Source of the DNA: Camelus dromedarius | Taxonomy: Eukaryota | Direction of reading: 5' to 3' | DNA: 64,000 bases | Assembly: GCF_036321535.1 (NCBI RefSeq) | Contig: NC_087473.1 | Location: 14,384,001-14,448,000, forward strand | Shown here: positions 7,152 through 62,175 of the stretch, in pieces | Position numbering within the stretch: the first letter of the stretch is position 1 | How the letters are laid out: each line of letters starts with the position of its first letter | The notes under the pieces: generated by a model | What the model was told of the DNA's origin: nothing | Database searches by the model: none | Seen by the model: only the letters and a program-made list of their open reading frames with translations | Position numbers and translations under genes: made by a program

Positions 7152-7890
7152 ATGGCAGGGCTGCGGACAGAGCAGGCACTAGCGGGTGGCAGGTGCGAGG
7201 AGGCCAGCAGCCTCAGGGTGGAGGCCGTGCGGCAGGGAGCGTCGGCGGCGGCTGAGGCGGCGGCGGCGGCGGCGGCGGCGGCAGTGGCAGCTGCATCGTC
7301 GGAGGCGGAGGTTGTGGGCATGGGGGAGGCCTTGGTGCTGCTGGCGGACGACATCATGGAGGCTGTGGTGNNNNNNNNNNNNNNNNNNNNNNNNNNNNNN
7401 NNNNNNNNNNNNNNNNNNNNNNNNNNNNNNNNNNNNNNNNNNNNNNNNNNNNNNNNNNNNNNNNNNNNNNNNNNNNNNNNNNNNNNNNNNNNNNNNNNNN
7501 NNNNNNNNNNNNNNGAGGAGGTGGTGCAGGCCAAGGAGCGGGAAGAGAAGCCCCGGAAGCAGGGGCGCGCAGAGCCAGGGCGCGGACCCCCGACCTCCCT
7601 GAGCCCGCTGGAGGCCCTGGGGGCCCTTCAGTTAGAGCTGAGCGCTGTGAACGCCCAAGCCAACAGGGCCTACTTGCGGCTCAAGCGCAGGGTCCGTCGG
7701 AGGCGGGAGCCTCGTTTGGATCGAAGAAGAGCCATCATCCAGGACATCCCCGGCTTCTGGGCCAAAGCTGTATCCTTGCTGCTGCTCCTTGGGGTTGGCT
7801 GCTGCCGGAGGGCAGGAGGGGGAACAGGGCGAGAAGGAGGTTGGGCCAGGGGGAGGGGGAGGAGGAGGGCAGGCGGCAACGGGCTGGGCC

Positions 7891-7921
<31 letters not shown>

Positions 7922-10503
7922 TGGGGGCGGCAAAGGGCAGGGTGGGGAGGGGAAGCAGGAGGAGAAGGAAGAGGAGGACCGGGAGCGGCGGAACCAGGGG
8001 CAGGAGGAAGGGAGGAAGGCGGGCGCCAAGGCCAAGGGAAGAGGGCTGAGAGTGGAGGCATGGAGGCCTGCAAGGGCACAGCATGAGGGCGCTGAGGGCC
8101 AAAGGCCAAACGTGCAGGCGTGGGAGCGCCAACTTTGGGTGGATCCTTCTGGCCTGGGGCCTGCAGGGGAAGCCTTCCTGGGGTCAAGGAGCGCATGGCA
8201 ACAGTGAACAGCGCGTGCAGAGCCCCCAGCACCCTCCCCACAGAGCAGAGAGTGGAAGCGTGCAGTCTCCCGGGGAAATCCCAGGAGACCGGTGGGCGTG
8301 CCAGGACCCATCCCAGTCAGCCAGAGGCTGTGGACTTGTTGCCGCCACGTCCCTGCCGAAGCAGCAGGTCGTCCGCGGCCAGGTGTGAGCTGCAAGAGGC
8401 CCCCGTCCCGGGCAAGACTACGGGACCCCAGACGCCCTCGGGTGGGCTCCCAGCCTGGCCTCCACCGGCCCTTCTCGTGCAGGCAGAAGCACGTGCCCTC
8501 CCCGTTGCACCCTGTGAGTCCCCCGGAGCTGCAGCCCTAGCCACGCAGACAGACTCCTCTCACCCCGGAGGGCGGCTTGAAGGCCCGGGGCTTCCTGTCA
8601 GCACCCGTGGCCCGCCCCCTACTCAGAGGACGCGTGGGTCCACGGGGGCAGGGCACATCCCGACTCCGCGAGCGGTGACGAGCCTGCAGCCAGCACACAC
8701 AGGCCAGCCACAGGTCGGGGACGGTCGGGGAACAGGCCCTCCCCGAGGGGGTGTCGACGGCCCAAGATGCACGGGAAGGCCGGAACCCCGCCGCCACGCG
8801 CCTGTGAGACGGCAGGGCAGGGCCCGAGGAGGTCGGCGGGGCGGGGCGAGGGGGGGGTGGGCAGCAGTGCGCGCCCGGAGTCCTGGCAGATCGCCCGTCC
8901 GGTCTCTTCCTCTGGCCCCAGCCTGGCTGTGTTGGCTGTGGCTCTTCCAGCCGTAGCACGTGAAGGCTCCTTGACCTACTGAAGATTGTGAGTCACCCCC
9001 AGCTGTCGGCCTTGATCAGTGACCAAGACGAAGACGTGCTGAGCTACATGATCACCTTGGAGGTCAGGCCGGGCAGACGGAGGCCACGGTGGTGGGGTGG
9101 GGGGATGCGGGGAGGAGGGGGCCGGGTGTCCCCGAGGGCCGGGTGCGAGCAGCGGGAGAGCGGAAGGGGAAGTGGTTCATCCCTGCCGGGCAGGCCAGCT
9201 CAGGTGGCCGGGAAGAGCCGTCACTCTTCTCCTGCTGTTGGGCGTGGCAGGCGCAGGAACTGGGCCGCCCCGAGTACCGCTGCAGGTTGATGTTCTTCTT
9301 CCGGAGCAACCCCTACTTCTGCAACCAAGTGATCCTTAAGGAGTATCACCTTAGCTTCGCAGGTAGGCGGGCTGTCCCGGGATGGGGGAAGGCGGCGGGG
9401 CGGGGCGGTGTGTGCCCGGGAGGCCTTGGATGCTGGGCCAGCGGGATCCCTCCCCTCAGCGTATGCCCCGCTCTTCCTCTAGGCTACAGGGCGTATAGTT
9501 CCACTCCAGTGCAGTGGTTCTGGGATTACGAACGGGGAGCCCCCAGCCGCAGGCAGGACGCCGTCAGCCTTAACTTCCTCAACTGGTTGTCAGGCCACGA
9601 CTGCCCCGGGTCTGACAGGATTGCTGAGGTGGGGGTCCCCCGGGGCCTGGTCGGAAATGGCGACGTCGGCGGTGGCCAGCAGCTCGGGGAAGGGGCGTGG
9701 GCCCTGTCCCGACCTGCCCGTTCCCTCCGCCAGATCATCGTCGAGGACCTGTGGCCCAACCCCCTGCGCTACTACCCGAGGGAGCAAGGCGCCGGGAGAG
9801 GTAACTGGGAGGGGGGCACGTCCCTGAGGAGCCCCGGGGCAGGGGGTGTTGGCGAAGGGTGTTTCCAGGACCCTTTCCCAATCGGGGTGAGGCAGGCTGA
9901 GACAAGCCTGGGAGCGGGGCGACCCCAGGCCGCCCAGGGAGCGGGCGCGAGGGTGAGCCAGGGGCCCGGAGGACCCAGGCGCACGCGCAGAGCACCGAAG
10001 CTTTCGGCTTTCGCGGAACGTCCCAGGGGTGTCCGCGAAAGGAGCGGGCCTCCTCAGGCACCCTCGTGTGCGTCGGCACACCCTGGCTTCGGCCCTCCCT
10101 GGGGCCTGGTCCGACTGCCTCCGCGCTTGGGATCAGCTGGGCCCCTGCGTCCGCCCCCGGCCGCCTGGCCAAGGCCTCCAGACGCTGAGGAGGTGGGCTC
10201 CCTGAATGTCCAGGCGCATCCCTCAGCGACCCGGCTCCACCCGGACGGTCCTGGAAAGGGCCGCAGGCTGTCTGGAGGCCACTGGGGAGGCGCCCGGGGA
10301 GAAAGGGCGGGGCGTGCCGCCTGTTGCGCGCCATCTCTCCGGTTGTCTGTTGGACACAGGCCGCTTCAGCTGCGCCTTGGGTTGTTCCCGTGCGTGTCCG
10401 TGTCGGTCTGTGCCCGCGTGCCCACGAGCAGGCTTCCTCATGCGTCGGTGGTCCTGCAGAGCCAGCGGTGAAGGCGACGGAGCAGGAGAGTTCGGCCGAG
10501 TAG
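7152..10503 (+). CDS. TSPY: TSPY copy 2. Exons 7152-7769, 8985-9062, 9251-9362, 9483-9628, 9734-9800; probable last exon 10460-10503. Exon 1 contains a 144-N gap
   Basis: ATG in strong Kozak context (gccATGG). Exon 1 ends ...[16 protein letters not shown] and exon 2 reads [26 protein letters not shown]. Internal exon sizes 78/112/146 nt match the TSPY exon structure as I recall it. The spliced frame is open. Confidence 0.88.
7256..7294 (+). repeat. Coding (GCG)n microsatellite (poly-Ala, 11-13 codons) in exon 1 of copies 2-8
   Basis: GCG run after GCT GAG. 13 codons in copies 2, 3, 4 and 6; 11 codons in copies 5, 7 and 8. Confidence 0.9.
7371..7514. other. Assembly gap (144 N) over the GAG/GTG repeat of copy 2 exon 1
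   Basis: Run of N flanked by ...GCTGTGGTG and GAGGAGGTGGTGCAG. The homologous interval is 96-123 nt in the resolved copies. Confidence 0.99.
7770..8984 (+). other. TSPY intron 1, U12-type (minor spliceosome) GT-AG intron. Also at 16817-18034, 25881-27098, 34924-36140, 43942-45158, 52978-54194, 62024-63238
   Basis: 5' splice site GTATCCTTG (U12 consensus RTATCCTT). Branch site TCCTTGAC at 8968-8975 (consensus TCCTTRAC), with its A 10 nt before the 3' end. No polypyrimidine tract between branch site and AG. Confidence 0.88.
7892..7921 (+). repeat. (GGGGTC)5 hexanucleotide repeat in intron 1, potential G-quadruplex, present in copies 2-8
   Basis: Five exact GGGGTC units followed by TGGGGG, giving six G-tracts with 2-3 nt loops. 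Confidence 0.85.
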
Positions 10504-16240: not shown

Positions 16241-16937
16241 ATGGCAGGGCTGCGGACAGAGCAGGCACTAGCGGGTGGCAGGTGCGAGGAGGCCAGCAGC
16301 CTCAGGGTGGAGGCCGTGCGGCAGGGAGCGTCGGCGGCGGCTGAGGCGGCGGCGGCGGCGGCGGCGGCGGCAGTGGCAGCTGCATCGTCGGAGGCGGAGG
16401 TTGTGGGCATGGGGGAGGCCTTGGTGCTGCTGGCGGACGACATCATGGAGGCTGTGGTGGAGGTGGTGGCGGAGGAGCAGGAGGAGCAGGAGTCGCAGGA
16501 GGAGGAGGAGGAGGAGGAGGAGGAGGAGGAGGAGGTGGAGGAGGTGGTGGAGGAGGTGGTGGAGGAGGTGGTGCAGGCCAAGGAGCGGGAAGAGAAGCCC
16601 CGGAAGCAGGGGCGCGCAGAGCCAGGGCGCGGACCCCCGACCTCCCTGAGCCCGCTGGAGGCCCTGGGGGCCCTTCAGTTAGAGCTGAGCGCTGTGAACG
16701 CCCAAGCCAACAGGGCCTACTTGCGGCTCAAGCGCAGGGTCCGTCGGAGGCGGGAGCCTCGTTTGGATCGAAGAAGAGCCATCATCCAGGACATCCCCGG
16801 CTTCTGGGCCAAAGCTGTATCCTTGCTGCTGCTCCTTGGGGTTGGCTGCTGCCGGAGGGCAGGAGGGGGAACAGGGCGAGAAGGAGGTTGGGCCAGGGGG
16901 AGGGGGAGGAGGAGGGCAGGCGGCAACGGGCTGGGCC

Positions 16938-16968
<31 letters not shown>

Positions 16969-19553
16969 TGGGGGCGGCAAAGGGCAGGGTGGGGAGGGGA
17001 AGCAGGAGGAGAAGGAAGAGGAGGACCGGGAGCGGCGGAACCAGGGGCAGGAGGAAGGGAGGAAGGCGGGCGCCAAGGCCAAGGGAAGAGGGCTGAGAGT
17101 GGAGGCATGGAGGCCTGCAAGGGCACAGCATGAGGGCGCTGAGGGCCAAAGGCCAAACGTGCAGGCGTGGGAGCGCCAACTTTGGGTGGATCCTTCTGGC
17201 CTGGGGCCTGCAGGGGAAGCCTTCCTGGGGTCAAGGAGCGCATGGCAACAGTGAACAGCGCGTGCAGAGCCCCCAGCACCCTCCCCACAGAGCAGAGAGT
17301 GGAAGCGTGCAGTCTCCCGGGGAAATCCCAGGAGACCGGTGGGCGTGCCAGGACCCATCCCAGTCAGCCAGAGGCTGTGGACTTGTTGCCGCCACGTCCC
17401 TGCCGAAGCAGCAGGTCGTCCGCGGCCAGGTGTGAGCTGCAAGAGGCCCCCGTCCCGGGCAAGACTACGGGACCCCAGACACGCCCTCGGGTGGGCTCCC
17501 AGCCTGGCCTCCACCGGCCCTTCTCGTGCAGGCAGAAGCACGTGCCCTCCCCGTTGCACCCTGTGAGTCCCCCGGAGCTGCAGCCCTAGCCACGCAGACA
17601 GACTCCTCTCACCCCGGAGGGCGGCTTGAAGGCCCGGGGCTTCCTGTCAGCACCCGTGGCCCGCCCCCTACTCAGAGGACGCGTGGGTCCACGGGGGCAG
17701 GGCACATCCCGACTCCGCGAGCGGTGACGAGCCTGCAGCCAGCACACACAGGCCAGCCACAGGTCGGGGACGGTCGGGGAACAGGCCCTCCCCGAGGGGG
17801 TGTCGACGGCCCAAGATGCACGGGAAGGCCGGAACCCCGCCGCCACGCGCCTGTGAGACGGCAGGGCAGGGCCCGAGGAGGTCGGCGGGGCGGGGCGAGG
17901 GGGGGGGTGGGCAGCAGTGCGCGCCCGGAGTCCTGGCAGATCGCCCGTCCGGTCTCTTCCTCTGGCCCCAGCCTGGCTGTGTTGGCTGTGGCTCTTCCAG
18001 CCGTAGCACGTGAAGGCTCCTTGACCTACTGAAGATTGTGAGTCACCCCCAGCTGTCGGCCTTGATCAGTGACCAAGACGAAGACGTGCTGAGCTACATG
18101 ATCACCTTGGAGGTCAGGCCGGGCAGACGGAGGCCACGGTGGTGGGGTGGGGGGATGCGGGGAGGAGGGGGCCGGGTGTCCCCGAGGGCCGGGTGCGAGC
18201 AGCGGGAGAGCGGAAGGGGAAGTGGTTCATCCCTGCCGGGCAGGCCAGCTCAGGTGGCCGGGAAGAGCCGTCACTCTTCTCCTGCTGTTGGGCGTGGCAG
18301 GCGCAGGAACTGGGCCGCCCCGAGTACCGCTGCAGGTTGATGTTCTTCTTCCGGAGCAACCCCTACTTCTGCAACCAAGTGATCCTTAAGGAGTATCACC
18401 TTAGCTTCGCAGGTAGGCGGGCTGTCCCGGGATGGGGGAAGGCGGCGGGGCGGGGCGGTGTGTGCCCGGGAGGCCTTGGATGCTGGGCCAGCGGGATCCC
18501 TCCCCTCAGCGTATGCCCCGCTCTTCCTCTAGGCTACAGGGCGTATAGTTCCACTCCAGTGCAGTGGTTCTGGGATTACGAACGGGGAGCCCCCAGCCGC
18601 AGGCAGGACGCCGTCAGCCTTAACTTCCTCAACTGGTTGTCAGGCCACGACTGCCCCGGGTCTGACAGGATTGCTGAGGTGGGGGTCCCCCGGGGCCTGG
18701 TCGGAAATGGCGACGTCGGCGGTGGCCAGCAGCTCGGGGAAGGGGCGTGGGCCCTGTCCCGACCTGCCCGTTCCCTCCGCCAGATCATCGTCGAGGACCT
18801 GTGGCCCAACCCCCTGCGCTACTACCCGAGGGAGCAAGGCGCCGGGAGAGGTAACTGGGAGGGGGGCACGTCCCTGAGGAGCCCCGGGGCAGGGGGTGTT
18901 GGCGAAGGGTGTTTCCAGGACCCTTTCCCAATCGGGGTGAGGCAGGCTGAGACAAGCCTGGGAGCGGGGCGACCCCAGGCCGCCCAGGGAGCGGGCGCGA
19001 GGGTGAGCCAGGGGCCCGGAGGACCCAGGCGCACGCGCAGAGCACCGAAGCTTTCGGCTTTCGCGGAACGTCCCAGGGGTGTCCGCGAAAGGAGCGGGCC
19101 TCCTCAGGCACCCTCGTGTGCGTCGGCACACCCTGGCTTCGGCCCTCCCTGGGGCCTGGTCCGACTGCCTCCGCGCTTGGGATCAGCTGGGCCCCTGCGT
19201 CCGCCCCCGGCCGCCTGGCCAAGGCCTCCAGACGCTGAGGAGGTGGGCTCCCTGAATGTCCAGGCGCATCCCTCAGCGACCCGGCTCCACCCGGACGGTC
19301 CTGGAAAGGGCCGCAGGCTGTCTGGAGGCCACTGGGGAGGCGCCCGGGGAGAAAGGGCGGGGCGTGCCGCCTGTTGCGCGCCATCTCTCCGGTTGTCTGT
19401 TGGACACAGGCCGCTTCAGCTGCGCCTTGGGTTGTTCCCGTGCGTGTCCGTGTCGGTCTGTGCCCGCGTGCCCGCGAGCAGGCTTCCTCATGCGTCGGTG
19501 GTCCTGCAGAGCCAGCGGTGAAGGCGACGGAGCAGGAGAGTTCGGCCGAGTAG
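16241..19553 (+). CDS. TSPY: TSPY copy 3, ~340 aa. Exons 16241-16816, 18035-18112, 18301-18412, 18533-18678, 18784-18850, 19510-19553 (last exon inferred)
   Basis: Complete open spliced frame. Exon 1 is 192 codons with an A9-V-A3 tract, E12 and three VEEV blocks. NAP-domain exons translate identically to the other copies. Confidence 0.93.
16499..16534 (+). repeat. Coding (GAG)n microsatellite (poly-Glu) in exon 1. n=12 here; 19 at 25542-25598; 10 at 34612-34641; 12 at 43636-43671; 10 at 52666-52695; 19 at 61697-61753
   Basis: Counted directly. Followed by two or three GTGGAGGAGGTG (VEEV) blocks. Confidence 0.95.
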
Positions 19554-25283: not shown

Positions 25284-26001
25284 ATGGCAGGGCTGCGGAC
25301 AGAGCAGGCACTAGCGGGTGGCAGGTGCGAGGAGGCCAGCAGCCTCAGGGTGGAGGCCGTGCGGCAGGGAGCGTCGGCGGCGGCTGAGGCGGCGGCGGCG
25401 GCGGCGGCGGCGGCAGCGGCAGCTGCATCGTCGGAGGCGGAGGTTGTGGGCATGGGGGAGGCCTTGGTGCTGCTGGCGGACGACATCATGGAGGCTGTGG
25501 TGGAGGTGGTGGCGGAGGAGCAGGAGGAGCAGGAGTCGCAGGAGGAGGAGGAGGAGGAGGAGGAGGAGGAGGAGGAGGAGGAGGAGGAGGAGGAGGAGGT
25601 GGAGGAGGTGGTGGAGGAGGTGGTGGAGGAGGTGGTGCAGGCCAAGGAGCGGGAAGAGAAGCCCCGGAAGCAGGGGCGCGCAGAGCCAGGGCGCGGACCC
25701 CCGACCTCCCTGAGCCCGCTGGAGGCCCTGGGGGCCCTTCAGTTAGAGCTGAGCGCTGTGAACGCCCAAGCCAACAGGGCCTACTTGCGGCTCAAGCGCA
25801 GGGTCCGTCGGAGGCGGGAGCCTCGTTTGGATCGAAGAAGAGCCATCATCCAGGACATCCCCGGCTTCTGGGCCAAAGCTGTATCCTTGCTGCTGCTCCT
25901 TGGGGTTGGCTGCTGCCGGAGGGCAGGAGGGGGAACAGGGCGAGAAGGAGGTTGGGCCAGGGGGAGGGGGAGGAGGAGGGCAGGCGGCAACGGGCTGGGC
26001 C

Positions 26002-26032
<31 letters not shown>

Positions 26033-28617
26033 TGGGGGCGGCAAAGGGCAGGGTGGGGAGGGGAAGCAGGAGGAGAAGGAAGAGGAGGACCGGGAGCGGC
26101 GGAACCAGGGGCAGGAGGAAGGGAGGAAGGCGGGCGCCAAGGCCAAGGGAAGAGGGCTGAGAGTGGAGGCATGGAGGCCTGCAAGGGCACAGCATGAGGG
26201 CGCTGAGGGCCAAAGGCCAAACGTGCAGGCGTGGGAGCGCCAACTTTGGGTGGATCCTTCTGGCCTGGGGCCTGCAGGGGAAGCCTTCCTGGGGTCAAGG
26301 AGCGCATGGCAACAGTGAACAGCGCGTGCAGAGCCCCCAGCACCCTCCCCACAGAGCAGAGAGTGGAAGCGTGCAGTCTCCCGGGGAAATCCCAGGAGAC
26401 CGGTGGGCGTGCCAGGACCCATCCCAGTCAGCCAGAGGCTGTGGACTTGTTGCCGCCACGTCCCTGCCGAAGCAGCAGGTCGTCCGCGGCCAGGTGTGAG
26501 CTGCAAGAGGCCCCCGTCCCGGGCAAGACTACGGGACCCCAGACACGCCCTCGGGTGGGCTCCCAGCCTGGCCTCCACCGGCCCTTCTCGTGCAGGCAGA
26601 AGCACGTGCCCTCCCCGTTGCACCCTGTGAGTCCCCCGGAGCTGCAGCCCTAGCCACGCAGACAGACTCCTCTCACCCCGGAGGGCGGCTTGAAGGCCCG
26701 GGGCTTCCTGTCAGCACCCGTGGCCCGCCCCCTACTCAGAGGACGCGTGGGTCCACGGGGGCAGGGCACATCCCGACTCCGCGAGCGGTGACGAGCCTGC
26801 AGCCAGCACACACAGGCCAGCCACAGGTCGGGGACGGTCGGGGAACAGGCCCTCCCCGAGGGGGTGTCGACGGCCCAAGATGCACGGGAAGGCCGGAACC
26901 CCGCCGCCACGCGCCTGTGAGACGGCAGGGCAGGGCCCGAGGAGGTCGGCGGGGCGGGGCGAGGGGGGGGGTGGGCAGCAGTGCGCGCCCGGAGTCCTGG
27001 CAGATCGCCCGTCCGGTCTCTTCCTCTGGCCCCAGCCTGGCTGTGTTGGCTGTGGCTCTTCCAGCCGTAGCACGTGAAGGCTCCTTGACCTACTGAAGAT
27101 TGTGAGTCACCCCCAGCTGTCGGCCTTGATCAGTGACCAAGACGAAGACGTGCTGAGCTACATGATCACCTTGGAGGTCAGGCCGGGCAGACGGAGGCCA
27201 CGGTGGTGGGGTGGGGGGATGCGGGGAGGAGGGGGCCGGGTGTCCCCGAGGGCCGGGTGCGAGCAGCGGGAGAGCGGAAGGGGAAGTGGTTCATCCCTGC
27301 CGGGCAGGCCAGCTCAGGTGGCCGGGAAGAGCCGTCACTCTTCTCCTGCTGTTGGGCGTGGCAGGCGCAGGAACTGGGCCGCCCCGAGTACCGCTGCAGG
27401 TTGATGTTCTTCTTCCGGAGCAACCCCTACTTCTGCAACCAAGTGATCCTTAAGGAGTATCACCTTAGCTTCGCAGGTAGGCGGGCTGTCCCGGGATGGG
27501 GGAAGGCGGCGGGGCGGGGCGGTGTGTGCCCGGGAGGCCTTGGATGCTGGGCCAGCGGGATCCCTCCCCTCAGCGTATGCCCCGCTCTTCCTCTAGGCTA
27601 CAGGGCGTATAGTTCCACTCCAGTGCAGTGGTTCTGGGATTACGAACGGGGAGCCCCCAGCCGCAGGCAGGACGCCGTCAGCCTTAACTTCCTCAACTGG
27701 TTGTCAGGCCACGACTGCCCCGGGTCTGACAGGATTGCTGAGGTGGGGGTCCCCCGGGGCCTGGTCGGAAATGGCGACGTCGGCGGTGGCCAGCAGCTCG
27801 GGGAAGGGGCGTGGGCCCTGTCCCGACCTGCCCGTTCCCTCCGCCAGATCATCGTCGAGGACCTGTGGCCCAACCCCCTGCGCTACTACCCGAGGGAGCA
27901 AGGCGCCGGGAGAGGTAACTGGGAGGGGGGCACGTCCCTGAGGAGCCCCGGGGCAGGGGGTGTTGGCGAAGGGTGTTTCCAGGACCCTTTCCCAATCGGG
28001 GTGAGGCAGGCTGAGACAAGCCTGGGAGCGGGGCGACCCCAGGCCGCCCAGGGAGCGGGCGCGAGGGTGAGCCAGGGGCCCGGAGGACCCAGGCGCACGC
28101 GCAGAGCACCGAAGCTTTCGGCTTTCGCGGAACGTCCCAGGGGTGTCCGCGAAAGGAGCGGGCCTCCTCAGGCACCCTCGTGTGCGTCGGCACACCCTGG
28201 CTTCGGCCCTCCCTGGGGCCTGGTCCGACTGCCTCCGCGCTTGGGATCAGCTGGGCCCCTGCGTCCGCCCCCGGCCGCCTGGCCAAGGCCTCCAGACGCT
28301 GAGGAGGTGGGCTCCCTGAATGTCCAGGCGCATCCCTCAGCGACCCGGCTCCACCCGGACGGTCCTGGAAAGGGCCGCAGGCTGTCTGGAGGCCACTGGG
28401 GAGGCGCCCGGGGAGAAAGGGCGGGGCGTGCCGCCTGTTGCGCGCCATCTCTCCGGTTGTCTGTTGGACACAGGCCGCTTCAGCTGCGCCTTGGGTTGTT
28501 CCCGTGCGTGTCCGTGTCGGTCTGTGCCCGCGTGCCCGCGAGCAGGCTTCCTCATGCGTCGGTGGTCCTGCAGAGCCAGCGGTGAAGGCGACGGAGCAGG
28601 AGAGTTCGGCCGAGTAG
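25284..28617 (+). CDS. TSPY: TSPY copy 4, ~347 aa. Exons 25284-25880, 27099-27176, 27365-27476, 27597-27742, 27848-27914, 28574-28617 (last exon inferred)
   Basis: Open spliced frame. Exon 1 is 199 codons with A13, E19 and three VEEV blocks. Confidence 0.93.
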
Positions 28618-34359: not shown

Positions 34360-35044
34360 ATGGCAGGGCTGTGGACAGAGCAGGCACTAGCGGGTGGCAG
34401 GTGCGAGGAGGCCAGCAGCCTCAGGGTGGAGGCCGTGCGGCAGGGAGCGTCGGCGGCGGCTGAGGCGGCGGCGGCGACGGCGGCAGCGGCAGCTGCATCG
34501 TCGGAGGCGGAGGTTGTGGGCATGGGGGAGGCCTTGGTGCTGCTGGCGGACGACATCATGGAGGCTGTGGTGGAGGTGGTGGCGGAGGAGCAGGAGGAGC
34601 AGGAGTCGCAGGAGGAGGAGGAGGAGGAGGAGGAGGAGGAGGTGGAGGAGGTGGTGGAGGAGGTGGTGGAGGAGGTGGTGCAGGCCAAGGAGCGGGAAGA
34701 GAAGCCCCGGAAGCAGGGGCGCGCAGAGCCAGGGCGCGGACCCCCGACCTCCCTGAGCCCGCTGGAGGCCCTGGGGGCCCTTCAGTTAGAGCTGAGCGCT
34801 GTGAACGCCCAAGCCAACAGGGCCTACTTGCGGCTCAAGCGCAGGGTCCGTCGGAGGCGGGAGCCTCGTTTGGATCGAAGAAGAGCCATCATCCAGGACA
34901 TCCCCGGCTTCTGGGCCAAAGCTGTATCCTTGCTGCTGCTCCTTGGGGTTGGCTGCTGCCGGAGGGCAGGAGGGGGAACAGGGCGAGAAGGAGGTTGGGC
35001 CAGGGGGAGGGGGAGGAGGAGGGCAGGCGGCAACGGGCTGGGCC

Positions 35045-35075
<31 letters not shown>

Positions 35076-37659
35076 TGGGGGCGGCAAAGGGCAGGGTGGG
35101 GAGGGGAAGCAGGAGGAGAAGGAAGAGGAGGACCGGGAGCGGCGGAACCAGGGGCAGGAGGAAGGGAGGAAGGCGGGCGCCAAGGCCAAGGGAAGAGGGC
35201 TGAGAGTGGAGGCATGGAGGCCTGCAAGGGCACAGCATGAGGGCGCTGAGGGCCAAAGGCCAAACGTGCAGGCGTGGGAGCGCCAACTTTGGGTGGATCC
35301 TTCTGGCCTGGGGCCTGCAGGGGAAGCCTTCCTGGGGTCAAGGAGCGCATGGCAACAGTGAACAGCGCGTGCAGAGCCCCCAGCACCCTCCCCACAGAGC
35401 AGAGAGTGGAAGCGTGCAGTCTCCCGGGGAAATCCCAGGAGACCGGTGGGCGTGCCAGGACCCATCCCAGTCAGCCAGAGGCTGTGGACTTGTTGCCGCC
35501 ACGTCCCTGCCGAAGCAGCAGGTCGTCCGCGGCCAGGTGTGAGCTGCAAGAGGCCCCCGTCCCGGGCAAGACTACGGGACCCCAGACACGCCCTCGGGTG
35601 GGCTCCCAGCCTGGCCTCCACCGGCCCTTCTCGTGCAGGCAGAAGCACGTGCCCTCCCCGTTGCACCCTGTGAGTCCCCCGGAGCTGCAGCCCTAGCCAC
35701 GCAGACAGACTCCTCTCACCCCGGAGGGCGGCTTGAAGGCCCGGGGCTTCCTGTCAGCACCCGTGGCCCGCCCCCTACTCAGAGGACGCGTGGGTCCACG
35801 GGGGCAGGGCACATCCCGACTCCGCGAGCGGTGACGAGCCTGCAGCCAGCACACACAGGCCAGCCACAGGTCGGGGACGGTCGGGGAACAGGCCCTCCCC
35901 GAGGGGGTGTCGACGGCCCAAGATGCACGGGAAGGCCGGAACCCCGCCGCCACGCGCCTGTGAGACGGCAGGGCAGGGCCCGAGGAGGTCGGCGGGGCGG
36001 GGCGAGGGGGGGGTGGGCAGCAGTGCGCGCCCGGAGTCCTGGCAGATCGCCCGTCCGGTCTCTTCCTCTGGCCCCAGCCTGGCTGTGTTGGCTGTGGCTC
36101 TTCCAGCCGTAGCACGTGAAGGCTCCTTGACCTACTGAAGATTGTGAGTCACCCCCAGCTGTCGGCCTTGATCAGTGACCAAGACGAAGACGTGCTGAGC
36201 TACATGATCACCTTGGAGGTCAGGCCGGGCAGACGGAGGCCACGGTGGTGGGGTGGGGGGATGCGGGGAGGAGGGGGCCGGGTGTCCCCGAGGGCCGGGT
36301 GCGAGCAGCGGGAGAGCGGAAGGGGAAGTGGTTCATCCCTGCCGGGCAGGCCAGCTCAGGTGGCCGGGAAGAGCCGTCACTCTTCTCCTGCTGTTGGGCG
36401 TGGCAGGCGCAGGAACTGGGCCGCCCCGAGTACCGCTGCAGGTTGATGTTCTTCTTCCGGAGCAACCCCTACTTCTGCAACCAAGTGATCCTTAAGGAGT
36501 ATCACCTTAGCTTCGCAGGTAGGCGGGCTGTCCCGGGATGGGGGAAGGCGGCGGGGCGGGGCGGTGTGTGCCCGGGAGGCCTTGGATGCTGGGCCAGCGG
36601 GATCCCTCCCCTCAGCGTATGCCCCGCTCTTCCTCTAGGCTACAGGGCGTATAGTTCCACTCCAGTGCAGTGGTTCTGGGATTACGAACGGGGAGCCCCC
36701 AGCCGCAGGCAGGACGCCGTCAGCCTTAACTTCCTCAACTGGTTGTCAGGCCACGACTGCCCCGGGTCTGACAGGATTGCTGAGGTGGGGGTCCCCCGGG
36801 GCCTGGTCGGAAATGGCGACGTCGGCGGTGGCCAGCAGCTCGGGGAAGGGGCGTGGGCCCTGTCCCGACCTGCCCGTTCCCTCCGCCAGATCATCGTCGA
36901 GGACCTGTGGCCCAACCCCCTGCGCTACTACCCGAGGGAGCAAGGCGCCGGGAGAGGTAACTGGGAGGGGGGCACGTCCCTGAGGAGCCCCGGGGCAGGG
37001 GGTGTTGGCGAAGGGTGTTTCCAGGACCCTTTCCCAATCGGGGTGAGGCAGGCTGAGACAAGCCTGGGAGCGGGGCGACCCCAGGCCGCCCAGGGAGCGG
37101 GCGTGAGGGTGAGCCAGGGGCCCGGAGGACCCAGGCGCACGCGCAGAGCACCGAAGCTTTCGGCTTTCGCGGAACGTCCCAGGGGTGTCCGCGAAAGGAG
37201 CGGGCCTCCTCAGGCACCCTCGTGTGCGTCGGCACACCCTGGCTTCGGCCCTCCCTGGGGCCTGGTCCGACTGCCTCCGCGCTTGGGATCAGCTGGGCCC
37301 CTGCGTCCGCCCCCGGCCGCCTGGCCAAGGCCTCCAGACGCTGAGGAGGTGGGCTCCCTGAATGTCCAGGCGCATCCCTCAGCGACCCGGCTCCACCCGG
37401 ACGGTCCTGGAAAGGGCCGCAGGCTGTCTGGAGGCCACTGGGGAGGCGCCCGGGGAGAAAGGGCGGGGCGTGCCGCCTGTTGCGCGCCATCTCTCCGGTT
37501 GTCTGTTGGACACAGGCCGCTTCAGCTGCGCCTTGGGTTGTTCCCGTGCGTGTCCGTGTCGGTCTGTGCCCGCGTGCCCGCGAGCAGGCTTCCTCATGCG
37601 TCGGTGGTCCTGCAGAGCCAGCGGTGAAGGCGACGGAGCAGGAGAGTTCGGCCGAGTAG
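34360..37659 (+). CDS. TSPY: TSPY copy 5, ~336 aa. Exons 34360-34923, 36141-36218, 36407-36518, 36639-36784, 36890-36956, 37616-37659 (last exon inferred)
   Basis: Open spliced frame. Exon 1 is 188 codons with R5W, A4-T-A6, E10 and three VEEV blocks. Confidence 0.93.
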
Positions 37660-43377: not shown

Positions 43378-44062
43378 ATGGCAGGGCTGCGGACAGAGCA
43401 GGCACTAGCGGGTGGCAGGTGCGAGGAGGCCTGCAGCCTCAGGGTGGAGGCCGTGCGGCAGGGAGCGTCGGCGGCGGCTGAGGCGGCGGCGGCGGCGGCG
43501 GCGGCGGCAGCGGCAGCTGCATCGTCGGAGGCGGAGGTTGTGGGCATGGGGGAGGCCTTGGTGCTGCTGGCGGACGACATCATGGAGGCTGTGGTGGAGG
43601 TGGTGGCGGAGGAGCAGGAGGAGCAGGAGTCGCAGGAAGAGGAGGAGGAGGAGGAGGAGGAGGAGGAGGAGGTGGAGGAGGTGGTGGAGGAGGTGGTGCA
43701 GGCCAAGGAGCGGGAAGAGAAGCCCCGGAAGCAGGGGCGCGCAGAGCCAGGGCGCGGACCCCCGACCTCCCTGAGCCCGCTGGAGGCCCTGGGGGCCCTT
43801 CAGTTAGAGCTGAGCGCTGTGAACGCCCAAGCCAACAGGGCCTACTTGCGGCTCAAGCGCAGGGTCCGTCGGAGGCGGGAGCCTCGTTTGGATCGAAGAA
43901 GAGCCATCATCCAGGACATCCCCGGCTTCTGGGCCAAAGCTGTATCCTTGCTGCTGCTCCTTGGGGTTGGCTGCTGCCGGAGGGCAGGAGGGGGAACAGG
44001 GCGAGAAGGAGGTTGGGCCAGGGGGAGGGGGAGGAGGAGGGCAGGCGGCAACGGGCTGGGCC

Positions 44063-44093
<31 letters not shown>

Positions 44094-46677
44094 TGGGGGC
44101 GGCAAAGGGCAGGGTGGGGAGGGGAAGCAGGAGGAGAAGGAAGAGGAGGACCGGGAGCGGCGGAACCAGGGGCAGGAGGAAGGGAGGAAGGCGGGCGCCA
44201 AGGCCAAGGGAAGAGGGCTGAGAGTGGAGGCATGGAGGCCTGCAAGGGCACAGCATGAGGGCGCTGAGGGCCAAAGGCCAAACGTGCAGGCGTGGGAGCG
44301 CCAACTTTGGGTGGATCCTTCTGGCCTGGGGCCTGCAGGGGAAGCCTTCCTGGGGTCAAGGAGCGCATGGCAACAGTGAACAGCGCGTGCAGAGCCCCCA
44401 GCACCCTCCCCACAGAGCAGAGAGTGGAAGCGTGCAGTCTCCCGGGGAAATCCCAGGAGACCGGTGGGCGTGCCAGGACCCATCCCAGTCAGCCAGAGGC
44501 TGTGGACTTGTTGCCGCCACGTCCCTGCCGAAGCAGCAGGTCGTCCGCGGCCAGGTGTGAGCTGCAAGAGGCCCCCGTCCCGGGCAAGACTACGGGACCC
44601 CAGACACGCCCTCGGGTGGGCTCCCAGCCTGGCCTCCACCGGCCCTTCTCGTGCAGGCAGAAGCACGTGCCCTCCCCGTTGCACCCTGTGAGTCCCCCGG
44701 AGCTGCAGCCCTAGCCACGCAGACAGACTCCTCTCACCCCGGAGGGCGGCTTGAAGGCCCGGGGCTTCCTGTCAGCACCCGTGGCCCGCCCCCTACTCAG
44801 AGGACGCGTGGGTCCACGGGGGCAGGGCACATCCCGACTCCGCGAGCGGTGACGAGCCTGCAGCCAGCACACACAGGCCAGCCACAGGTCGGGGACGGTC
44901 GGGGAACAGGCCCTCCCCGAGGGGGTGTCGACGGCCCAAGATGCACGGGAAGGCCGGAACCCCGCCGCCACGCGCCTGTGAGACGGCAGGGCAGGGCCCG
45001 AGGAGGTCGGCGGGGCGGGGCGAGGGGGGGGTGGGCAGCAGTGCGCGCCCGGAGTCCTGGCAGATCGCCCGTCCGGTCTCTTCCTCTGGCCCCAGCCTGG
45101 CTGTGTTGGCTGTGGCTCTTCCAGCCGTAGCACGTGAAGGCTCCTTGACCTACTGAAGATTGTGAGTCACCCCCAGCTGTCGGCCTTGATCAGTGACCAA
45201 GACGAAGACGTGCTGAGCTACATGATCACCTTGGAGGTCAGGCCGGGCAGACGGAGGCCACGGTGGTGGGGTGGGGGGATGCGGGGAGGAGGGGGCCGGG
45301 TGTCCCCGAGGGCCGGGTGCGAGCAGCGGGAGAGCGGAAGGGGAAGTGGTTCATCCCTGCCGGGCAGGCCAGCTCAGGTGGCCGGGAAGAGCCGTCACTC
45401 TTCTCCTGCTGTTGGGCGTGGCAGGCGCAGGAACTGGGCCGCCCCGAGTACCGCTGCAGGTTGATGTTCTTCTTCCGGAGCAACCCCTACTTCTGCAACC
45501 AAGTGATCCTTAAGGAGTATCACCTTAGCTTCGCAGGTAGGCGGGCTGTCCCGGGATGGGGGAAGGCGGCGGGGCGGGGCGGTGTGTGCCCGGGAGGCCT
45601 TGGATGCTGGGCCAGCGGGATCCCTCCCCTCAGCGTATGCCCCGCTCTTCCTCTAGGCTACAGGGCGTATAGTTCCACTCCAGTGCAGTGGTTCTGGGAT
45701 TACGAACGGGGAGCCCCCAGCCGCAGGCAGGACGCCGTCAGCCTTAACTTCCTCAACTGGTTGTCAGGCCACGACTGCCCCGGGTCTGACAGGATTGCTG
45801 AGGTGGGGGTCCCCCGGGGCCTGGTCGGAAATGGCGACGTCGGCGGTGGCCAGCAGCTCGGGGAAGGGGCGTGGGCCCTGTCCCGACCTGCCCGTTCCCT
45901 CCGCCAGATCATCGTCGAGGACCTGTGGCCCAACCCCCTGCGCTACTACCCGAGGGAGCAAGGCGCCGGGAGAGGTAACTGGGAGGGGGGCACGTCCCTG
46001 AGGAGCCCCGGGGCAGGGGGTGTTGGCGAAGGGTGTTTCCAGGACCCTTTCCCAATCGGGGTGAGGCAGGCTGAGACAAGCCTGGGAGCGGGGCGACCCC
46101 AGGCCGCCCAGGGAGCGGGCGCGAGGGTGAGCCAGGGGCCCGGAGGACCCAGGCGCACGCGCAGAGCACCGAAGCTTTCGGCTTTCGCGGAACGTCCCAG
46201 GGGTGTCCGCGAAAGGAGCGGGCCTCCTCAGGCACCCTCGTGTGCGTCGGCACACCCTGGCTTCGGCCCTCCCTGGGGCCTGGTCCGACTGCCTCCGCGC
46301 TTGGGATCAGCTGGGCCCCTGCGTCCGCCCCCGGCCGCCTGGCCAAGGCCTCCAGACGCTGAGGAGGTGGGCTCCCTGAATGTCCAGGCGCATCCCTCAG
46401 CGACCCGGCTCCACCCGGACGGTCCTGGAAAGGGCCGCAGGCTGTCTGGAGGCCACTGGGGAGGCGCCCGGGGAGAAAGGGCGGGGCGTGCCGCCTGTTG
46501 CGCGCCATCTCTCCGGTTGTCTGTTGGACACAGGCCGCTTCAGCTGCGCCTTGGGTTGTTCCCGTGCGTGTCCGTGTCGGTCTGTGCCCGCGTGCCCGCG
46601 AGCAGGCTTCCTCATGCGTCGGTGGTCCTGCAGAGCCAGCGGTGAAGGCGACGGAGCAGGAGAGTTCGGCCGAGTAG
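43378..46677 (+). CDS. TSPY: TSPY copy 6, ~336 aa. Exons 43378-43941, 45159-45236, 45425-45536, 45657-45802, 45908-45974, 46634-46677 (last exon inferred)
   Basis: Open spliced frame. Exon 1 is 188 codons with S19C, A13, E12 (first codon GAA) and two VEEV blocks. Confidence 0.93.
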
Positions 46678-52413: not shown

Positions 52414-53098
52414 ATGGCAGGGCTGTGGACAGAGCAGGCACTAGCGGGTGGCAGGTGCGAGGAGGCCAGCAGCCTCAGGGTGGAGGCCGTGCGGCAGGGA
52501 GCGTCGGCGGCGGCTGAGGCGGCGGCGGCGGCGGCGGCAGCGGCAGCTGCATCGTCGGAGGCGGAGGTTGTGGGCATGGGGGAGGCCTTGGTGCTGCTGG
52601 CGGACGACATCATGGAGGCTGTGGTGGAGGTGGTGGCGGAGGAGCAGGAGGAGCAGGAGTCGCAGGAGGAGGAGGAGGAGGAGGAGGAGGAGGAGGTGGA
52701 GGAGGTGGTGGAGGAGGTGGTGGAGGAGGTGGTGCAGGCCAAGGAGCGGGAAGAGAAGCCCCGGAAGCAGGGGCGCGCAGAGCCAGGGCGCGGACCCCCG
52801 ACCTCCCTGAGCCCGCTGGAGGCCCTGGGGGCCCTTCAGTTAGAGCTGAGCGCTGTGAACGCCCAAGCCAACAGGGCCTACTTGCGGCTCAAGCGCAGGG
52901 TCCGTCGGAGGCGGGAGCCTCGTTTGGATCGAAGAAGAGCCATCATCCAGGACATCCCCGGCTTCTGGGCCAAAGCTGTATCCTTGCTGCTGCTCCTTGG
53001 GGTTGGCTGCTGCCGGAGGGCAGGAGGGGGAACAGGGCGAGAAGGAGGTTGGGCCAGGGGGAGGGGGAGGAGGAGGGCAGGCGGCAACGGGCTGGGCC

Positions 53099-53129
<31 letters not shown>

Positions 53130-55713
53130 TGGGGGCGGCAAAGGGCAGGGTGGGGAGGGGAAGCAGGAGGAGAAGGAAGAGGAGGACCGGGAGCGGCGGA
53201 ACCAGGGGCAGGAGGAAGGGAGGAAGGCGGGCGCCAAGGCCAAGGGAAGAGGGCTGAGAGTGGAGGCATGGAGGCCTGCAAGGGCACAGCATGAGGGCGC
53301 TGAGGGCCAAAGGCCAAACGTGCAGGCGTGGGAGCGCCAACTTTGGGTGGATCCTTCTGGCCTGGGGCCTGCAGGGGAAGCCTTCCTGGGGTCAAGGAGC
53401 GCATGGCAACAGTGAACAGCGCGTGCAGAGCCCCCAGCACCCTCCCCACAGAGCAGAGAGTGGAAGCGTGCAGTCTCCCGGGGAAATCCCAGGAGACCGG
53501 TGGGCGTGCCAGGACCCATCCCAGTCAGCCAGAGGCTGTGGACTTGTTGCCGCCACGTCCCTGCCGAAGCAGCAGGTCGTCCGCGGCCAGGTGTGAGCTG
53601 CAAGAGGCCCCCGTCCCGGGCAAGACTACGGGACCCCAGACACGCCCTCGGGTGGGCTCCCAGCCTGGCCTCCACCGGCCCTTCTCGTGCAGGCAGAAGC
53701 ACGTGCCCTCCCCGTTGCACCCTGTGAGTCCCCCGGAGCTGCAGCCCTAGCCACGCAGACAGACTCCTCTCACCCCGGAGGGCGGCTTGAAGGCCCGGGG
53801 CTTCCTGTCAGCACCCGTGGCCCGCCCCCTACTCAGAGGACGCGTGGGTCCACGGGGGCAGGGCACATCCTGACTCCGCGAGCGGTGACGAGCCTGCAGC
53901 CAGCACACACAGGCCAGCCACAGGTCGGGGACGGTCGGGGAACAGGCCCTCCCCGAGGGGGTGTCGACGGCCCAAGATGCACGGGAAGGCCGGAACCCCG
54001 CCGCCACGCGCCTGTGAGACGGCAGGGCAGGGCCCGAGGAGGTCGGCGGGGCGGGGCGAGGGGGGGGTGGGCAGCAGTGCGCGCCCGGAGTCCTGGCAGA
54101 TCGCCCGTCCGGTCTCTTCCTCTGGCCCCAGCCTGGCTGTGTTGGCTGTGGCTCTTCCAGCCGTAGCACGTGAAGGCTCCTTGACCTACTGAAGATTGTG
54201 AGTCACCCCCAGCTGTCGGCCTTGATCAGTGACCAAGACGAAGACGTGCTGAGCTACATGATCACCTTGGAGGTCAGGCCGGGCAGACGGAGGCCACGGT
54301 GGTGGGGTGGGGGGATGCGGGGAGGAGGGGGCCGGGTGTCCCCGAGGGCCGGGTGCGAGCAGCGGGAGAGCGGAAGGGGAAGTGGTTCATCCCTGCCGGG
54401 CAGGCCAGCTCAGGTGGCCGGGAAGAGCCGTCACTCTTCTCCTGCTGTTGGGCGTGGCAGGCGCAGGAACTGGGCCGCCCCGAGTACCGCTGCAGGTTGA
54501 TGTTCTTCTTCCGGAGCAACCCCTACTTCTGCAACCAAGTGATCCTTAAGGAGTATCACCTTAGCTTCGCAGGTAGGCGGGCTGTCCCGGGATGGGGGAA
54601 GGCGGCGGGGCGGGGCGGTGTGTGCCCGGGAGGCCTTGGATGCTGGGCCAGCGGGATCCCTCCCCTCAGCGTATGCCCCGCTCTTCCTCTAGGCTACAGG
54701 GCGTATAGTTCCACTCCAGTGCAGTGGTTCTGGGATTACGAACGGGGAGCCCCCAGCCGCAGGCAGGACGCCGTCAGCCTTAACTTCCTCAACTGGTTGT
54801 CAGGCCACGACTGCCCCGGGTCTGACAGGATTGCTGAGGTGGGGGTCCCCCGGGGCCTGGTCGGAAATGGCGACGTCGGCGGTGGCCAGCAGCTCGGGGA
54901 AGGGGCGTGGGCCCTGTCCCGACCTGCCCGTTCCCTCCGCCAGATCATCGTCGAGGACCTGTGGCCCAACCCCCTGCGCTACTACCCGAGGGAGCAAGGC
55001 GCCGGGAGAGGTAACTGGGAGGGGGGCACGTCCCTGAGGAGCCCCGGGGCAGGGGGTGTTGGCGAAGGGTGTTTCCAGGACCCTTTCCCAATCGGGGTGA
55101 GGCAGGCTGAGACAAGCCTGGGAGCGGGGCGACCCCAGGCCGCCCAGGGAGCGGGCGCGAGGGTGAGCCAGGGGCCCGGAGGACCCAGGCGCACGCGCAG
55201 AGCACCGAAGCTTTCGGCTTTCGCGGAACGTCCCAGGGGTGTCCGCGAAAGGAGCGGGCCTCCTCAGGCACCCTCGTGTGCGTCGGCACACCCTGGCTTC
55301 GGCCCTCCCTGGGGCCTGGTCCGACTGCCTCCGCGCTTGGGATCAGCTGGGCCCCTGCGTCCGCCCCCGGCCGCCTGGCCAAGGCCTCCAGACGCTGAGG
55401 AGGTGGGCTCCCTGAATGTCCAGGCGCATCCCTCAGCGACCCGGCTCCACCCGGACGGTCCTGGAAAGGGCCGCAGGCTGTCTGGAGGCCACTGGGGAGG
55501 CGCCCGGGGAGAAAGGGCGGGGCGTGCCGCCTGTTGCGCGCCATCTCTCCGGTTGTCTGTTGGACACAGGCCGCTTCAGCTGCGCCTTGGGTTGTTCCCG
55601 TGCGTGTCCGTGTCGGTCTGTGCCCGCGTGCCCGCGAGCAGGCTTCCTCATGCGTCGGTGGTCCTGCAGAGCCAGCGGTGAAGGCGACGGAGCAGGAGAG
55701 TTCGGCCGAGTAG
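52414..55713 (+). CDS. TSPY: TSPY copy 7, ~336 aa. Exons 52414-52977, 54195-54272, 54461-54572, 54693-54838, 54944-55010, 55670-55713 (last exon inferred)
   Basis: Open spliced frame. Exon 1 is 188 codons with R5W, A11, E10 and three VEEV blocks. Confidence 0.93.
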
Positions 55714-61444: not shown

Positions 61445-62144
61445 ATGGCAGGGCTGTGGACAGAGCAGGCACTAGCGGGTGGCAGGTGCGAGGAGGCCAG
61501 CAGCCTCAGGGTGGAGGCCGTGCGGCAGGGAGCGTCGGCGGCGGCTGAGGCGGCGGCGGCGGCGGCGGCAGCGGCAGCTGCATCGTCGGAGGCGGAGGTT
61601 GTGGGCATGGGGGAGGCCTTGGTGCTGCTGGCAGACGACATCATGGAGGCTGTGGTGGAGGTGGTGGCGGAGGAGCAGGAGGAGCAGGAGTCGCAGGAGG
61701 AGGAGGAGGAGGAGGAGGAGGAGGAGGAGGAGGAGGAGGAGGAGGAGGAGGAGGTGGAGGAGGTGGTGGAGGAGGTGGTGCAGGCCAAGGAGCGGGAAGA
61801 GAAGCCCCGGAAGCAGGGGCGCGCAGAGCCAGGGCGCGGACCCCCGACCTCCCTGAGCCCGCTGGAGGCCCTGGGGGCCCTTCAGTTAGAGCTGAGCGCT
61901 GTGAACGCCCAAGCCAACAGGGCCTACTTGCGGCTCAAGCGCAGGGTCCGTCGGAGGCGGGAGCCTCGTTTGGATCGAAGAAGAGCCATCATCCAGGACA
62001 TCCCCGGCTTCTGGGCCAAAGCTGTATCCTTGCTGCTGCTCCTTGGGGTTGGCTGCTGCCGGAGGGCAGGAGGGGGAACAGGGCGAGAAGGAGGTTGGGC
62101 CAGGGGGAGGGGGAGGAGGAGGGCAGGCGGCAACGGGCTGGGCC

Positions 62145-62175
<31 letters not shown>

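What the first reader, a model, noticed from the sequence alone, without database searches (positions are those of the whole stretch)
7770..8984. Intron 1 has a minor-spliceosome (U12-type) signature in all seven copies that include it
Seen: donor GTATCCTTG, branch site TCCTTGAC with A at -11, no polypyrimidine tract and an otherwise weak AAG acceptor. These are the same in all seven copies that include intron 1 (copies 2-8). Known: RTATCCTT and TCCTTRAC define U11/U12 introns, which are rare and slowly spliced. I recall the paralogue Tspyl2 being listed as a U12-intron gene, so the intron class itself is probably not new. Inference: output from this amplified testis gene would depend on the low-abundance minor spliceosome (U11/U12, ZRSR1/2). 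Extra copies could then be buffered or gated at the splicing step in spermatogonia.
Basis: partly seen in the sequence, partly recalled or inferred. Interest (0 to 1): 0.7.

Follow-up and report, generated by a model that had tools for sequence, protein, structure and literature searches.

The report
U12-type intron in TSPY array
The first intron of every copy of this tandemly repeated testis gene (TSPY) carries textbook minor-spliceosome signals and is cut out of RNA exactly where predicted, but the same intron is already catalogued in human TSPY and in human and mouse TSPYL2, so it is an expected orthologue, not a discovery.

Summary
All seven copies of intron 1 in the window (period about 9.04 kb) have:
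- the donor GTATCCTTG;
- the branch site TCCTTGAC, with its A 11 nt before exon 2;
- an AAG acceptor.

RTATCCTT occurs nowhere else in the 64 kb.

RNA-library contigs from two studies join 7769 to 8985 exactly. They also support the other four introns, which look U2-type.

The bases before the donor are GCT, not AG, so the intron counts as "minor" rather than "minor-like".

The class is not new. The supplement of Olthof et al. 2019 (the Minor Intron Database paper) lists human TSPY1/2/3/4/8/10 and human and mouse TSPYL2 as minor-intron genes with nearly the same motifs. A 2025 paper names the TSPY family on the Y as one of two clusters of minor introns in the human genome.

Identity across seven copies is not independent evidence, because whole repeat units are 99.8-99.9% identical.

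The idea that minor splicing gates TSPY output was not tested. Unspliced contigs are no more prominent for intron 1 than for U2-type intron 5.

The scan has noted other U12 introns in this genome (LAGE3, ARL16), but not this one.

The parts
7515..7769 (+). 3' part of TSPY exon 1 (copy 2), downstream of the masked N run 7371-7514; ends in phase 0 with ...FWAKA
   Evidence: Translation in frame; weak Pfam NAP match, profile positions 3-48; RNA contig covers 7515-7769 and joins to 8985
7770..7778 (+). U12-type 5' splice site GTATCCTTG, preceded by GCT (no AG at -2/-1)
7770..8984 (+). Intron 1 of copy 2, 1215 nt, GT-AG U12-type
   Evidence: Joint 7769->8985 (skips 1215, GT..AG) in contigs of runs X4 and X5
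8968..8975 (+). U12 branch-point sequence TCCTTGAC; A at 8974, 11 nt before the first base of exon 2
8982..8984 (+). AAG 3' splice site
8985..9062 (+). Exon 2 (78 nt, phase 0 to phase 0)
   Evidence: Joints at both ends
9063..9250 (+). Intron 2, U2-type
9363..9482 (+). Intron 3, U2-type
9629..9733 (+). Intron 4, U2-type
9801..10459 (+). Intron 5, U2-type (alternative acceptor gives 9801-10359)
16817..18034 (+). Intron 1 of copy 3, same signals
25881..27098 (+). Intron 1 of copy 4, same signals
34924..36140 (+). Intron 1 of copy 5, same signals
43942..45158 (+). Intron 1 of copy 6, same signals
52978..54194 (+). Intron 1 of copy 7, same signals
62024..63238 (+). Intron 1 of copy 8, same signals

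Best explanation
Intron 1 of each TSPY copy is a GT-AG U12-type (minor) intron. It is probably the orthologue of the minor intron already catalogued in human TSPY genes and in the X-linked paralogue TSPYL2 of human and mouse. By the established mechanism for this class, the U11/U12 di-snRNP recognises the donor GTATCCTT and the branch site TCCTTGAC together. The 3' splice site is then chosen by its short distance from the branch point, not by a polypyrimidine tract, which explains why a weak AAG acceptor works. The intron lies in phase 0 in the N-terminal part of the NAP domain. Introns 2-5 are ordinary U2-type introns. Shown here: the motifs, their spacing, and the exact junction in RNA-library contigs. 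Inferred: use of the minor spliceosome (from sequence class) and orthology with the human and mouse introns (from shared motifs and gene family).
For: - Motifs and spacing.
- Consensus matching: intron 1 matches the U12 5'ss at 8/9 and the U2 5'ss at 3/9, and the branch site at 8/9 with the A at -11. Introns 2-5 match U12 at 2-4/9 and U2 at 6-7/9, and their best branch-site-like match is 5-6/9 at -19 to -30.
- RNA: joint 7769->8985 (GT..AG, skips 1215) in contigs of two RNA libraries from different studies (X4 depth 310; X5 depth 60.4). All four other introns are joined as well. Run X1 has unspliced contigs only.
- Minor versus minor-like: the -3..-1 bases are GCT, so the AG at -2/-1 that marks 'minor-like' introns in Olthof 2024 is absent.
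- Literature: the Olthof 2019 supplement lists human TSPY1/2/3/4/8/10 (intron 601-607 nt, GTT|GTATCCTTC, branch site GTCTCTTTGACC, scores 97.1/75.2). It also lists human and mouse TSPYL2 (GCA|GTATCCTTC..ATCCTTGACC, scores about 93/77; intron 1239 and 1159 nt).
- The TSPY family on the Y is named as a cluster of minor-intron genes.
- Pfam NAP matches on exons 1 and 3.
Against: - No experiment or minor-spliceosome knock-down data for this animal, so dependence on U11/U12/U6atac is inferred from sequence class only.
- No formal PWM or intronIC score was computed; only consensus matching was done.
- Position +9 is G, where the consensus prefers T.
- The acceptor is AAG rather than YAG.
- Orthology of intron position with human TSPY and TSPYL2 was not checked by a protein alignment.
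- The RNA evidence comes from assembled contigs, which show presence but not quantity or strand.
Confidence: 0.9

Rival explanations
1. The intron is removed by the major (U2) spliceosome, and its resemblance to U12 signals is chance or a relic.
For: GT-AG termini are compatible with both spliceosomes. No functional test was made here.
Against: The donor matches the U2 consensus at only 3/9 positions: T at -1 and C at +5 and +6. There is no polypyrimidine tract and the acceptor is a weak AAG. RTATCCTT occurs only at these donors in 64 kb. A consensus branch site sits at the canonical 11-nt distance. The same signals are kept in human TSPY and in human and mouse TSPYL2, which argues for selection.
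Confidence: 0.03
2. It is a 'minor-like' or hybrid intron that either spliceosome can use, on its way from minor to major.
For: Such intermediates exist (Olthof 2024). The human TSPY branch site is slightly degraded (TCTTTGAC), which hints at relaxed constraint in that lineage.
Against: The defining AG at -2/-1 of the donor is absent here (GCT). Both the donor and the branch site are at consensus, closer to it than in human TSPY.
Confidence: 0.05
3. An addition to the main reading rather than a true rival: the minor intron is rate-limiting, so output of the amplified array is buffered or gated by minor-spliceosome activity in germ cells.
For: Unspliced intron 1 contigs co-occur with the spliced form in RNA libraries X4 and X5. 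From general knowledge, minor introns can be spliced slowly and U6atac level can act as a switch. Zrsr1-mutant mice have impaired spermatogenesis (cited in Olthof 2019).
Against: In X4 the crude unspliced/(unspliced+spliced) depth is about 0.29 for intron 1 and about 0.32 for U2-type intron 5. In X5, intron 5 is more unspliced than intron 1. DNA carry-over cannot be excluded, and contig depth is a poor measure. [quoted passage not shown]
Confidence: 0.1

Closest known systems
Minor intron of human TSPY1/2/3/4/8/10 (Minor Intron Database; Olthof et al. 2019, PMC6717393 supplement)
   Same: Same gene family in a Y-linked tandem array. GT-AG U12-type donor GTATCCTT directly after an Ala/Val codon. 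Branch site ending TTGACC. One minor intron per copy, repeated across the array.
   Different: The human intron is 601-607 nt, against 1215-1218 nt here. The human branch site is TCTTTGAC (one step off consensus), while here it is the consensus TCCTTGAC. The -3..-1 bases are GTT in human and GCT here, and +9 is C in human and G here.
Minor intron of TSPYL2 (TSPX), human and mouse (same supplement)
   Same: Donor GTATCCTT after an Ala codon. Identical branch core TCCTTGACC. Similar length (1239 and 1159 nt, against 1215). This is consistent with one ancestral minor intron that predates the split of the X and Y copies.
   Different: TSPYL2 is a single-copy, broadly expressed X-linked gene. In human it also uses an alternative non-canonical TG acceptor. 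No alternative acceptor for intron 1 was seen in the contigs here.
GBP gene cluster on human chromosome 1
   Same: The only other genomic cluster of minor introns named in the human genome; it also arose by tandem duplication of a gene carrying a minor intron.
   Different: Unrelated gene family, autosomal, immune function.

Membership tests
U12-type (minor) GT-AG intron | 5' splice site RTATCCTT at +1..+8 | tested here: met
   GTATCCTT at 7770-7777 and in six more copies, with no other occurrence in the window; 8/9 to RTATCCTTT
U12-type (minor) GT-AG intron | Branch-point sequence TCCTTRAC | tested here: met
   TCCTTGAC at 8968-8975; 8/9 to TTCCTTRAC
U12-type (minor) GT-AG intron | Short, fixed distance from branch point to 3' splice site (about 10-15 nt) | tested here: met
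   A at 8974, exon 2 starts at 8985, so the distance is 11
U12-type (minor) GT-AG intron | No polypyrimidine tract between branch site and acceptor | tested here: met
   Only CCTACTGAAG follows the branch A. The longest pyrimidine run in the last 40 nt is 6, and it lies within or next to the branch motif
U12-type (minor) GT-AG intron | No AG at -2/-1 of the donor (separates 'minor' from 'minor-like', Olthof 2024) | tested here: met
   The -3..-1 bases are GCT; criterion
U12-type (minor) GT-AG intron | Intron is really excised at these sites | tested here: met
   Joint 7769->8985 in RNA-library contigs of X4 and X5, two studies
U12-type (minor) GT-AG intron | Splicing depends on U11/U12/U4atac/U6atac | not testable with these tools
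   Needs knock-down or a morpholino with a minigene, or CLIP
U12-type (minor) GT-AG intron | PWM or intronIC score above the minor-intron threshold | not tested
   No PWM set was on hand. A listed 12-mer that differs only at +9 (GCTGTATCCTTT) scores 98.7 in the Olthof 2019 table, so a pass is expected
Orthologue of the TSPY/TSPYL2 minor intron | Same intron position and phase in the protein as in human TSPY and TSPYL2 | tested here: inconclusive
   Shared motifs, an Ala/Val codon before the donor, and an intron length similar to TSPYL2. No cross-species protein alignment was made
TSPY / NAP-domain gene | Pfam NAP (PF00956) domain | tested here: inconclusive
   Searched exon by exon only. Exon 3 gives 24.4 bits (E 2e-05) and exon 1 gives 13.9 bits, both under the whole-protein cut-off of 28.6. 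Exons 2, 4 and 5 are too short to hit. The joined protein was not searched, by rule

The most novel reading that the evidence does not exclude
The minor intron is kept at or near consensus in every copy of independently amplified Y-linked TSPY arrays (primates, and this camelid-like genome) because slow or regulated minor splicing throttles TSPY dosage in germ cells, making copy number partly invisible to selection.
Probability: 0.07. Interest if true: 0.5.

Novelty: already known. Interest (0 to 1): 0.15.

Why it matters
It matters little beyond correct annotation. The gene model for this TSPY array needs a U12-type intron 1 with an AAG acceptor, which U2-trained gene finders may miss or shift. 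The finding also adds a non-primate example showing that the TSPY/TSPYL2 minor intron is old and survives massive tandem amplification. Each extra Y-linked copy adds one more substrate for the minor spliceosome in testis. Whether that has any regulatory consequence is still untested.

Tried and rejected
- **Raw single-cell RNA run X21:** 0 reads laid at about 1% of the run read. This is no test.
- **Intron retention from contig depth:** intron 1 is unspliced at about 0.29 and intron 5 at about 0.32 in X4. In X5, intron 1 is at 27 against a joint depth of 60, and intron 5 at 132 against 55. This cannot be interpreted: contig depth is not quantitative, DNA carry-over is possible, and run X1 looks like DNA or unspliced RNA throughout. 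No verdict on gating.
- **Conservation from read variants:** about 16 variant places in intron 1 in other samples, none in the donor or in the stretch from branch site to acceptor. By my own estimate (no tool call), about 0.7 of such sets would miss those 26 nt by chance, so this is not evidence.
- **Identity across the seven copies as evidence of constraint:** rejected, because the units are 99.8-99.9% identical overall.
- **Rfam scan of the window:** nothing.
- **Pfam on exons 2, 4 and 5:** nothing, as they are too short.
- **Paper search 'TSPYL2' + 'minor intron':** 0 papers in main text. The information was in supplements.
- **Supplements of the 2025 iScience paper:** not held.
  - The exons were not joined into a spliced model for any search; each was searched by reference.
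  - The N run 7371-7514 was not filled or looked up.
  - The large protein searches were not needed.
  - A PWM was not built from the published 12-mers, to avoid typing sequence lists.

Full report
**1. What is in the sequence**

The window is G+C-rich (66-72%). It holds a head-to-tail array with a period of 9,018-9,064 bases.

Each unit carries a six-exon gene on the + strand. In copy 2 the visible 3' part of exon 1 runs to 7769. The next bases are GTATCCTTG (7770-7778). TCCTTGAC lies at 8968-8975, and the intron ends in AAG at 8982-8984.

- GTATCCTTG occurs 7 times in the window, once per unit, against 0.07 expected.
- The looser consensus RTATCCTT gives the same 7 sites and nothing else on either strand.
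- TCCTTGAC occurs on the + strand once per unit, at the same offset.
- The flanks of donor, branch site and acceptor are letter-identical in the seven copies, and the intron is 1215-1218 nt long.
- Copy 1 begins inside exon 2 at the window edge. Its acceptor for intron 2 is at 171 and no donor for intron 1 is present, so "seven copies that include it" is correct.

**2. How much the seven copies count**

Whole units are 99.83-99.93% identical. Intron 1 has only five variable alignment columns among the seven copies. At that identity any short motif would be the same in every copy. The seven-fold repeat therefore shows recent amplification or homogenisation, not seven independent cases of conservation. 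Evidence for constraint has to come from other species (section 5).

**3. Is it spliced there?**

I laid contigs of three RNA-labelled runs and the raw reads of one run on 7515-10900.

- Two RNA libraries from different studies (X4 and X5) each hold a contig that joins 7769 to 8985, skipping 1215 bases with GT..AG ends (depth 310 and 60.4).
- The same runs join all the other exons. This gives introns 9063-9250, 9363-9482, 9629-9733 and 9801-10459, with a minor alternative 9801-10359 in X4.
- Run X1 shows only colinear, unspliced contigs and is probably DNA or pre-mRNA.
- The raw-read single-cell run X21 laid nothing, so it is no test.

The junction is as predicted.

The N run 7371-7514 was left alone, and its counterpart in other copies was not read out.

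**4. Which class?**

Consensus matching of all five introns:

| Intron | Donor (-3..+9) | U12 5'ss RTATCCTTT | U2 5'ss MAG\|GTRAGT | Best match to TTCCTTRAC | Branch A position | Acceptor |
|---|---|---|---|---|---|---|
| 1 | gct\|GTATCCTTG | 8/9 | 3/9 | 8/9 | -11 | AAG |
| 2-5 | various | 2-4/9 | 6-7/9 | 5-6/9 | -19 to -30 | CAG or TAG |

- Intron 1 has no pyrimidine run longer than 6 in its last 40 nt. Introns 2-5 have runs of 7-11.
- The bases before the intron 1 donor are GCT. Olthof et al. 2024 separate "minor-like" introns, which both spliceosomes can approach, by an AG at -2/-1. That AG is absent here, so the intron falls in the strict "minor" class.
- No formal PWM was run. A 12-mer that differs from ours only at +9 (GCTGTATCCTTT) scores 98.7 in the published table, so a pass is expected.

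By the established mechanism for this class, U11/U12 binds the donor and branch site cooperatively. The acceptor is then picked by distance from the branch point, which explains why a poor AAG without a pyrimidine tract is used accurately. That step is inferred from the class, not shown here.

**5. What the gene is, and what is already known**

The exons were searched one by one by reference; the joined model was deliberately not built or searched. Exon 3 matches Pfam NAP (24.4 bits, E 2e-05) and the end of exon 1 matches the start of the same profile (13.9 bits). Both are below the whole-protein cut-off, as expected for fragments.

Notes of this scan on other pieces of the same genome call it camel. 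I did not verify the species. A neighbouring note calls the cluster TSPY.

The literature settles the novelty question.

| Gene (source: Olthof et al. 2019 supplement, PMC6717393) | Intron length | Donor | Branch site | Scores (5'ss / branch site) |
|---|---|---|---|---|
| Human TSPY1, 2, 3, 4, 8, 10 (several TSPY pseudogenes also listed) | 601-607 nt | GTT\|GTATCCTTC | GTCTCTTTGACC | 97.1 / 75.2 |
| Human TSPYL2 | 1239 nt | GCA\|GTATCCTTC | CAATCCTTGACC | about 93 / 77 |
| Mouse Tspyl2 | 1159 nt | GCA\|GTATCCTTC | AAATCCTTGACC | about 92 / 76 |

- The window's intron shares the donor core, the TTGACC end of the branch site and the codon type before the donor with all of these. It shares the exact branch core and the length with TSPYL2.
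- The simplest reading is one ancestral minor intron in the common ancestor of the X and Y copies, carried along in every amplification.
- Here the branch site is at consensus, while human TSPY has drifted by one base.
- I did not confirm by protein alignment that the intron sits at the same codon, so orthology of position is inferred.

**6. The functional inference**

Nothing here tests this.

- Unspliced intron 1 contigs do occur in X4 and X5, but so do unspliced contigs of U2-type intron 5, at a similar or higher share. In X4 the share is about 0.29 for intron 1 and 0.32 for intron 5. In X5 the depths (unspliced against joint) are 27 against 60 for intron 1, and 132 against 55 for intron 5.
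- The tool itself warns that contig depth is a poor measure and that DNA may be present.
- Olthof 2019 reports that testis expresses the most minor-intron genes, at the highest levels, yet shows few retained minor introns. This does not suggest a bottleneck in that tissue.
- The same paper cites impaired spermatogenesis in Zrsr1 mutant mice, so a link between minor splicing and male germ cells is plausible in general.

I give the gating idea about 0.1.

**7. Verdict**

- The class assignment is confirmed by sequence and by the RNA junction.
- The class is already catalogued for TSPY and TSPYL2 in human and mouse.
- This is the expected orthologue in another mammal, and the regulatory speculation is untested.
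- Interest is low. The practical value is a correct gene model with an AAG acceptor and a U12 donor.

Noticed in passing
window 1-64000: There are at least eight head-to-tail TSPY units of 9.02-9.06 kb at 99.8-99.9% identity. The alpaca draft Y assembly reported only 3 TSPY copies and a marginal qPCR increase (PMC7830431). If this genome is a camelid, its array is much larger than that draft suggested.
   Followed up: partly
window 9801 joined to about 13779-13805 (and the same offset in every unit: 4708, 22829, 31893, 40935, 49953, 58989): RNA contigs in X4 and X5 run from the end of exon 5 into 27-63 letters that do not lie on the stretch laid. They match a site about 4 kb downstream in each unit with 3 mismatches, preceded by an AG. 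This is probably an alternative distal 3' exon used by a slightly diverged copy. It fits the 7-exon alpaca TSPY model.
   Followed up: partly
window 9801-10359: An alternative acceptor for intron 5, 100 nt upstream of the main one, is seen in one contig of X4 (depth 54 against 290 for the main joint).
   Followed up: no
window 9053-9249: A contig of X5 joins 9053 to 9249 with 7 other letters in between, and several contigs differ at many exon and intron places. RNA from a diverged TSPY copy or lineage is present in the same sample. This is consistent with the neighbouring note about two TSPY lineages.
   Followed up: no
window 7891-7930: A (CGGGGT)n microsatellite of about 6.5 units lies inside intron 1. 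Assembled contigs break across 7879-7984. It is G-rich on the sense strand and could form a G-quadruplex.
   Followed up: no
window 7239-7282: A GCG triplet repeat (about 15 units) in exon 1 encodes an alanine run.
   Followed up: no
window 7371-7514: This is the only N run in the window (144 letters), inside exon 1 of copy 2.
   Followed up: no
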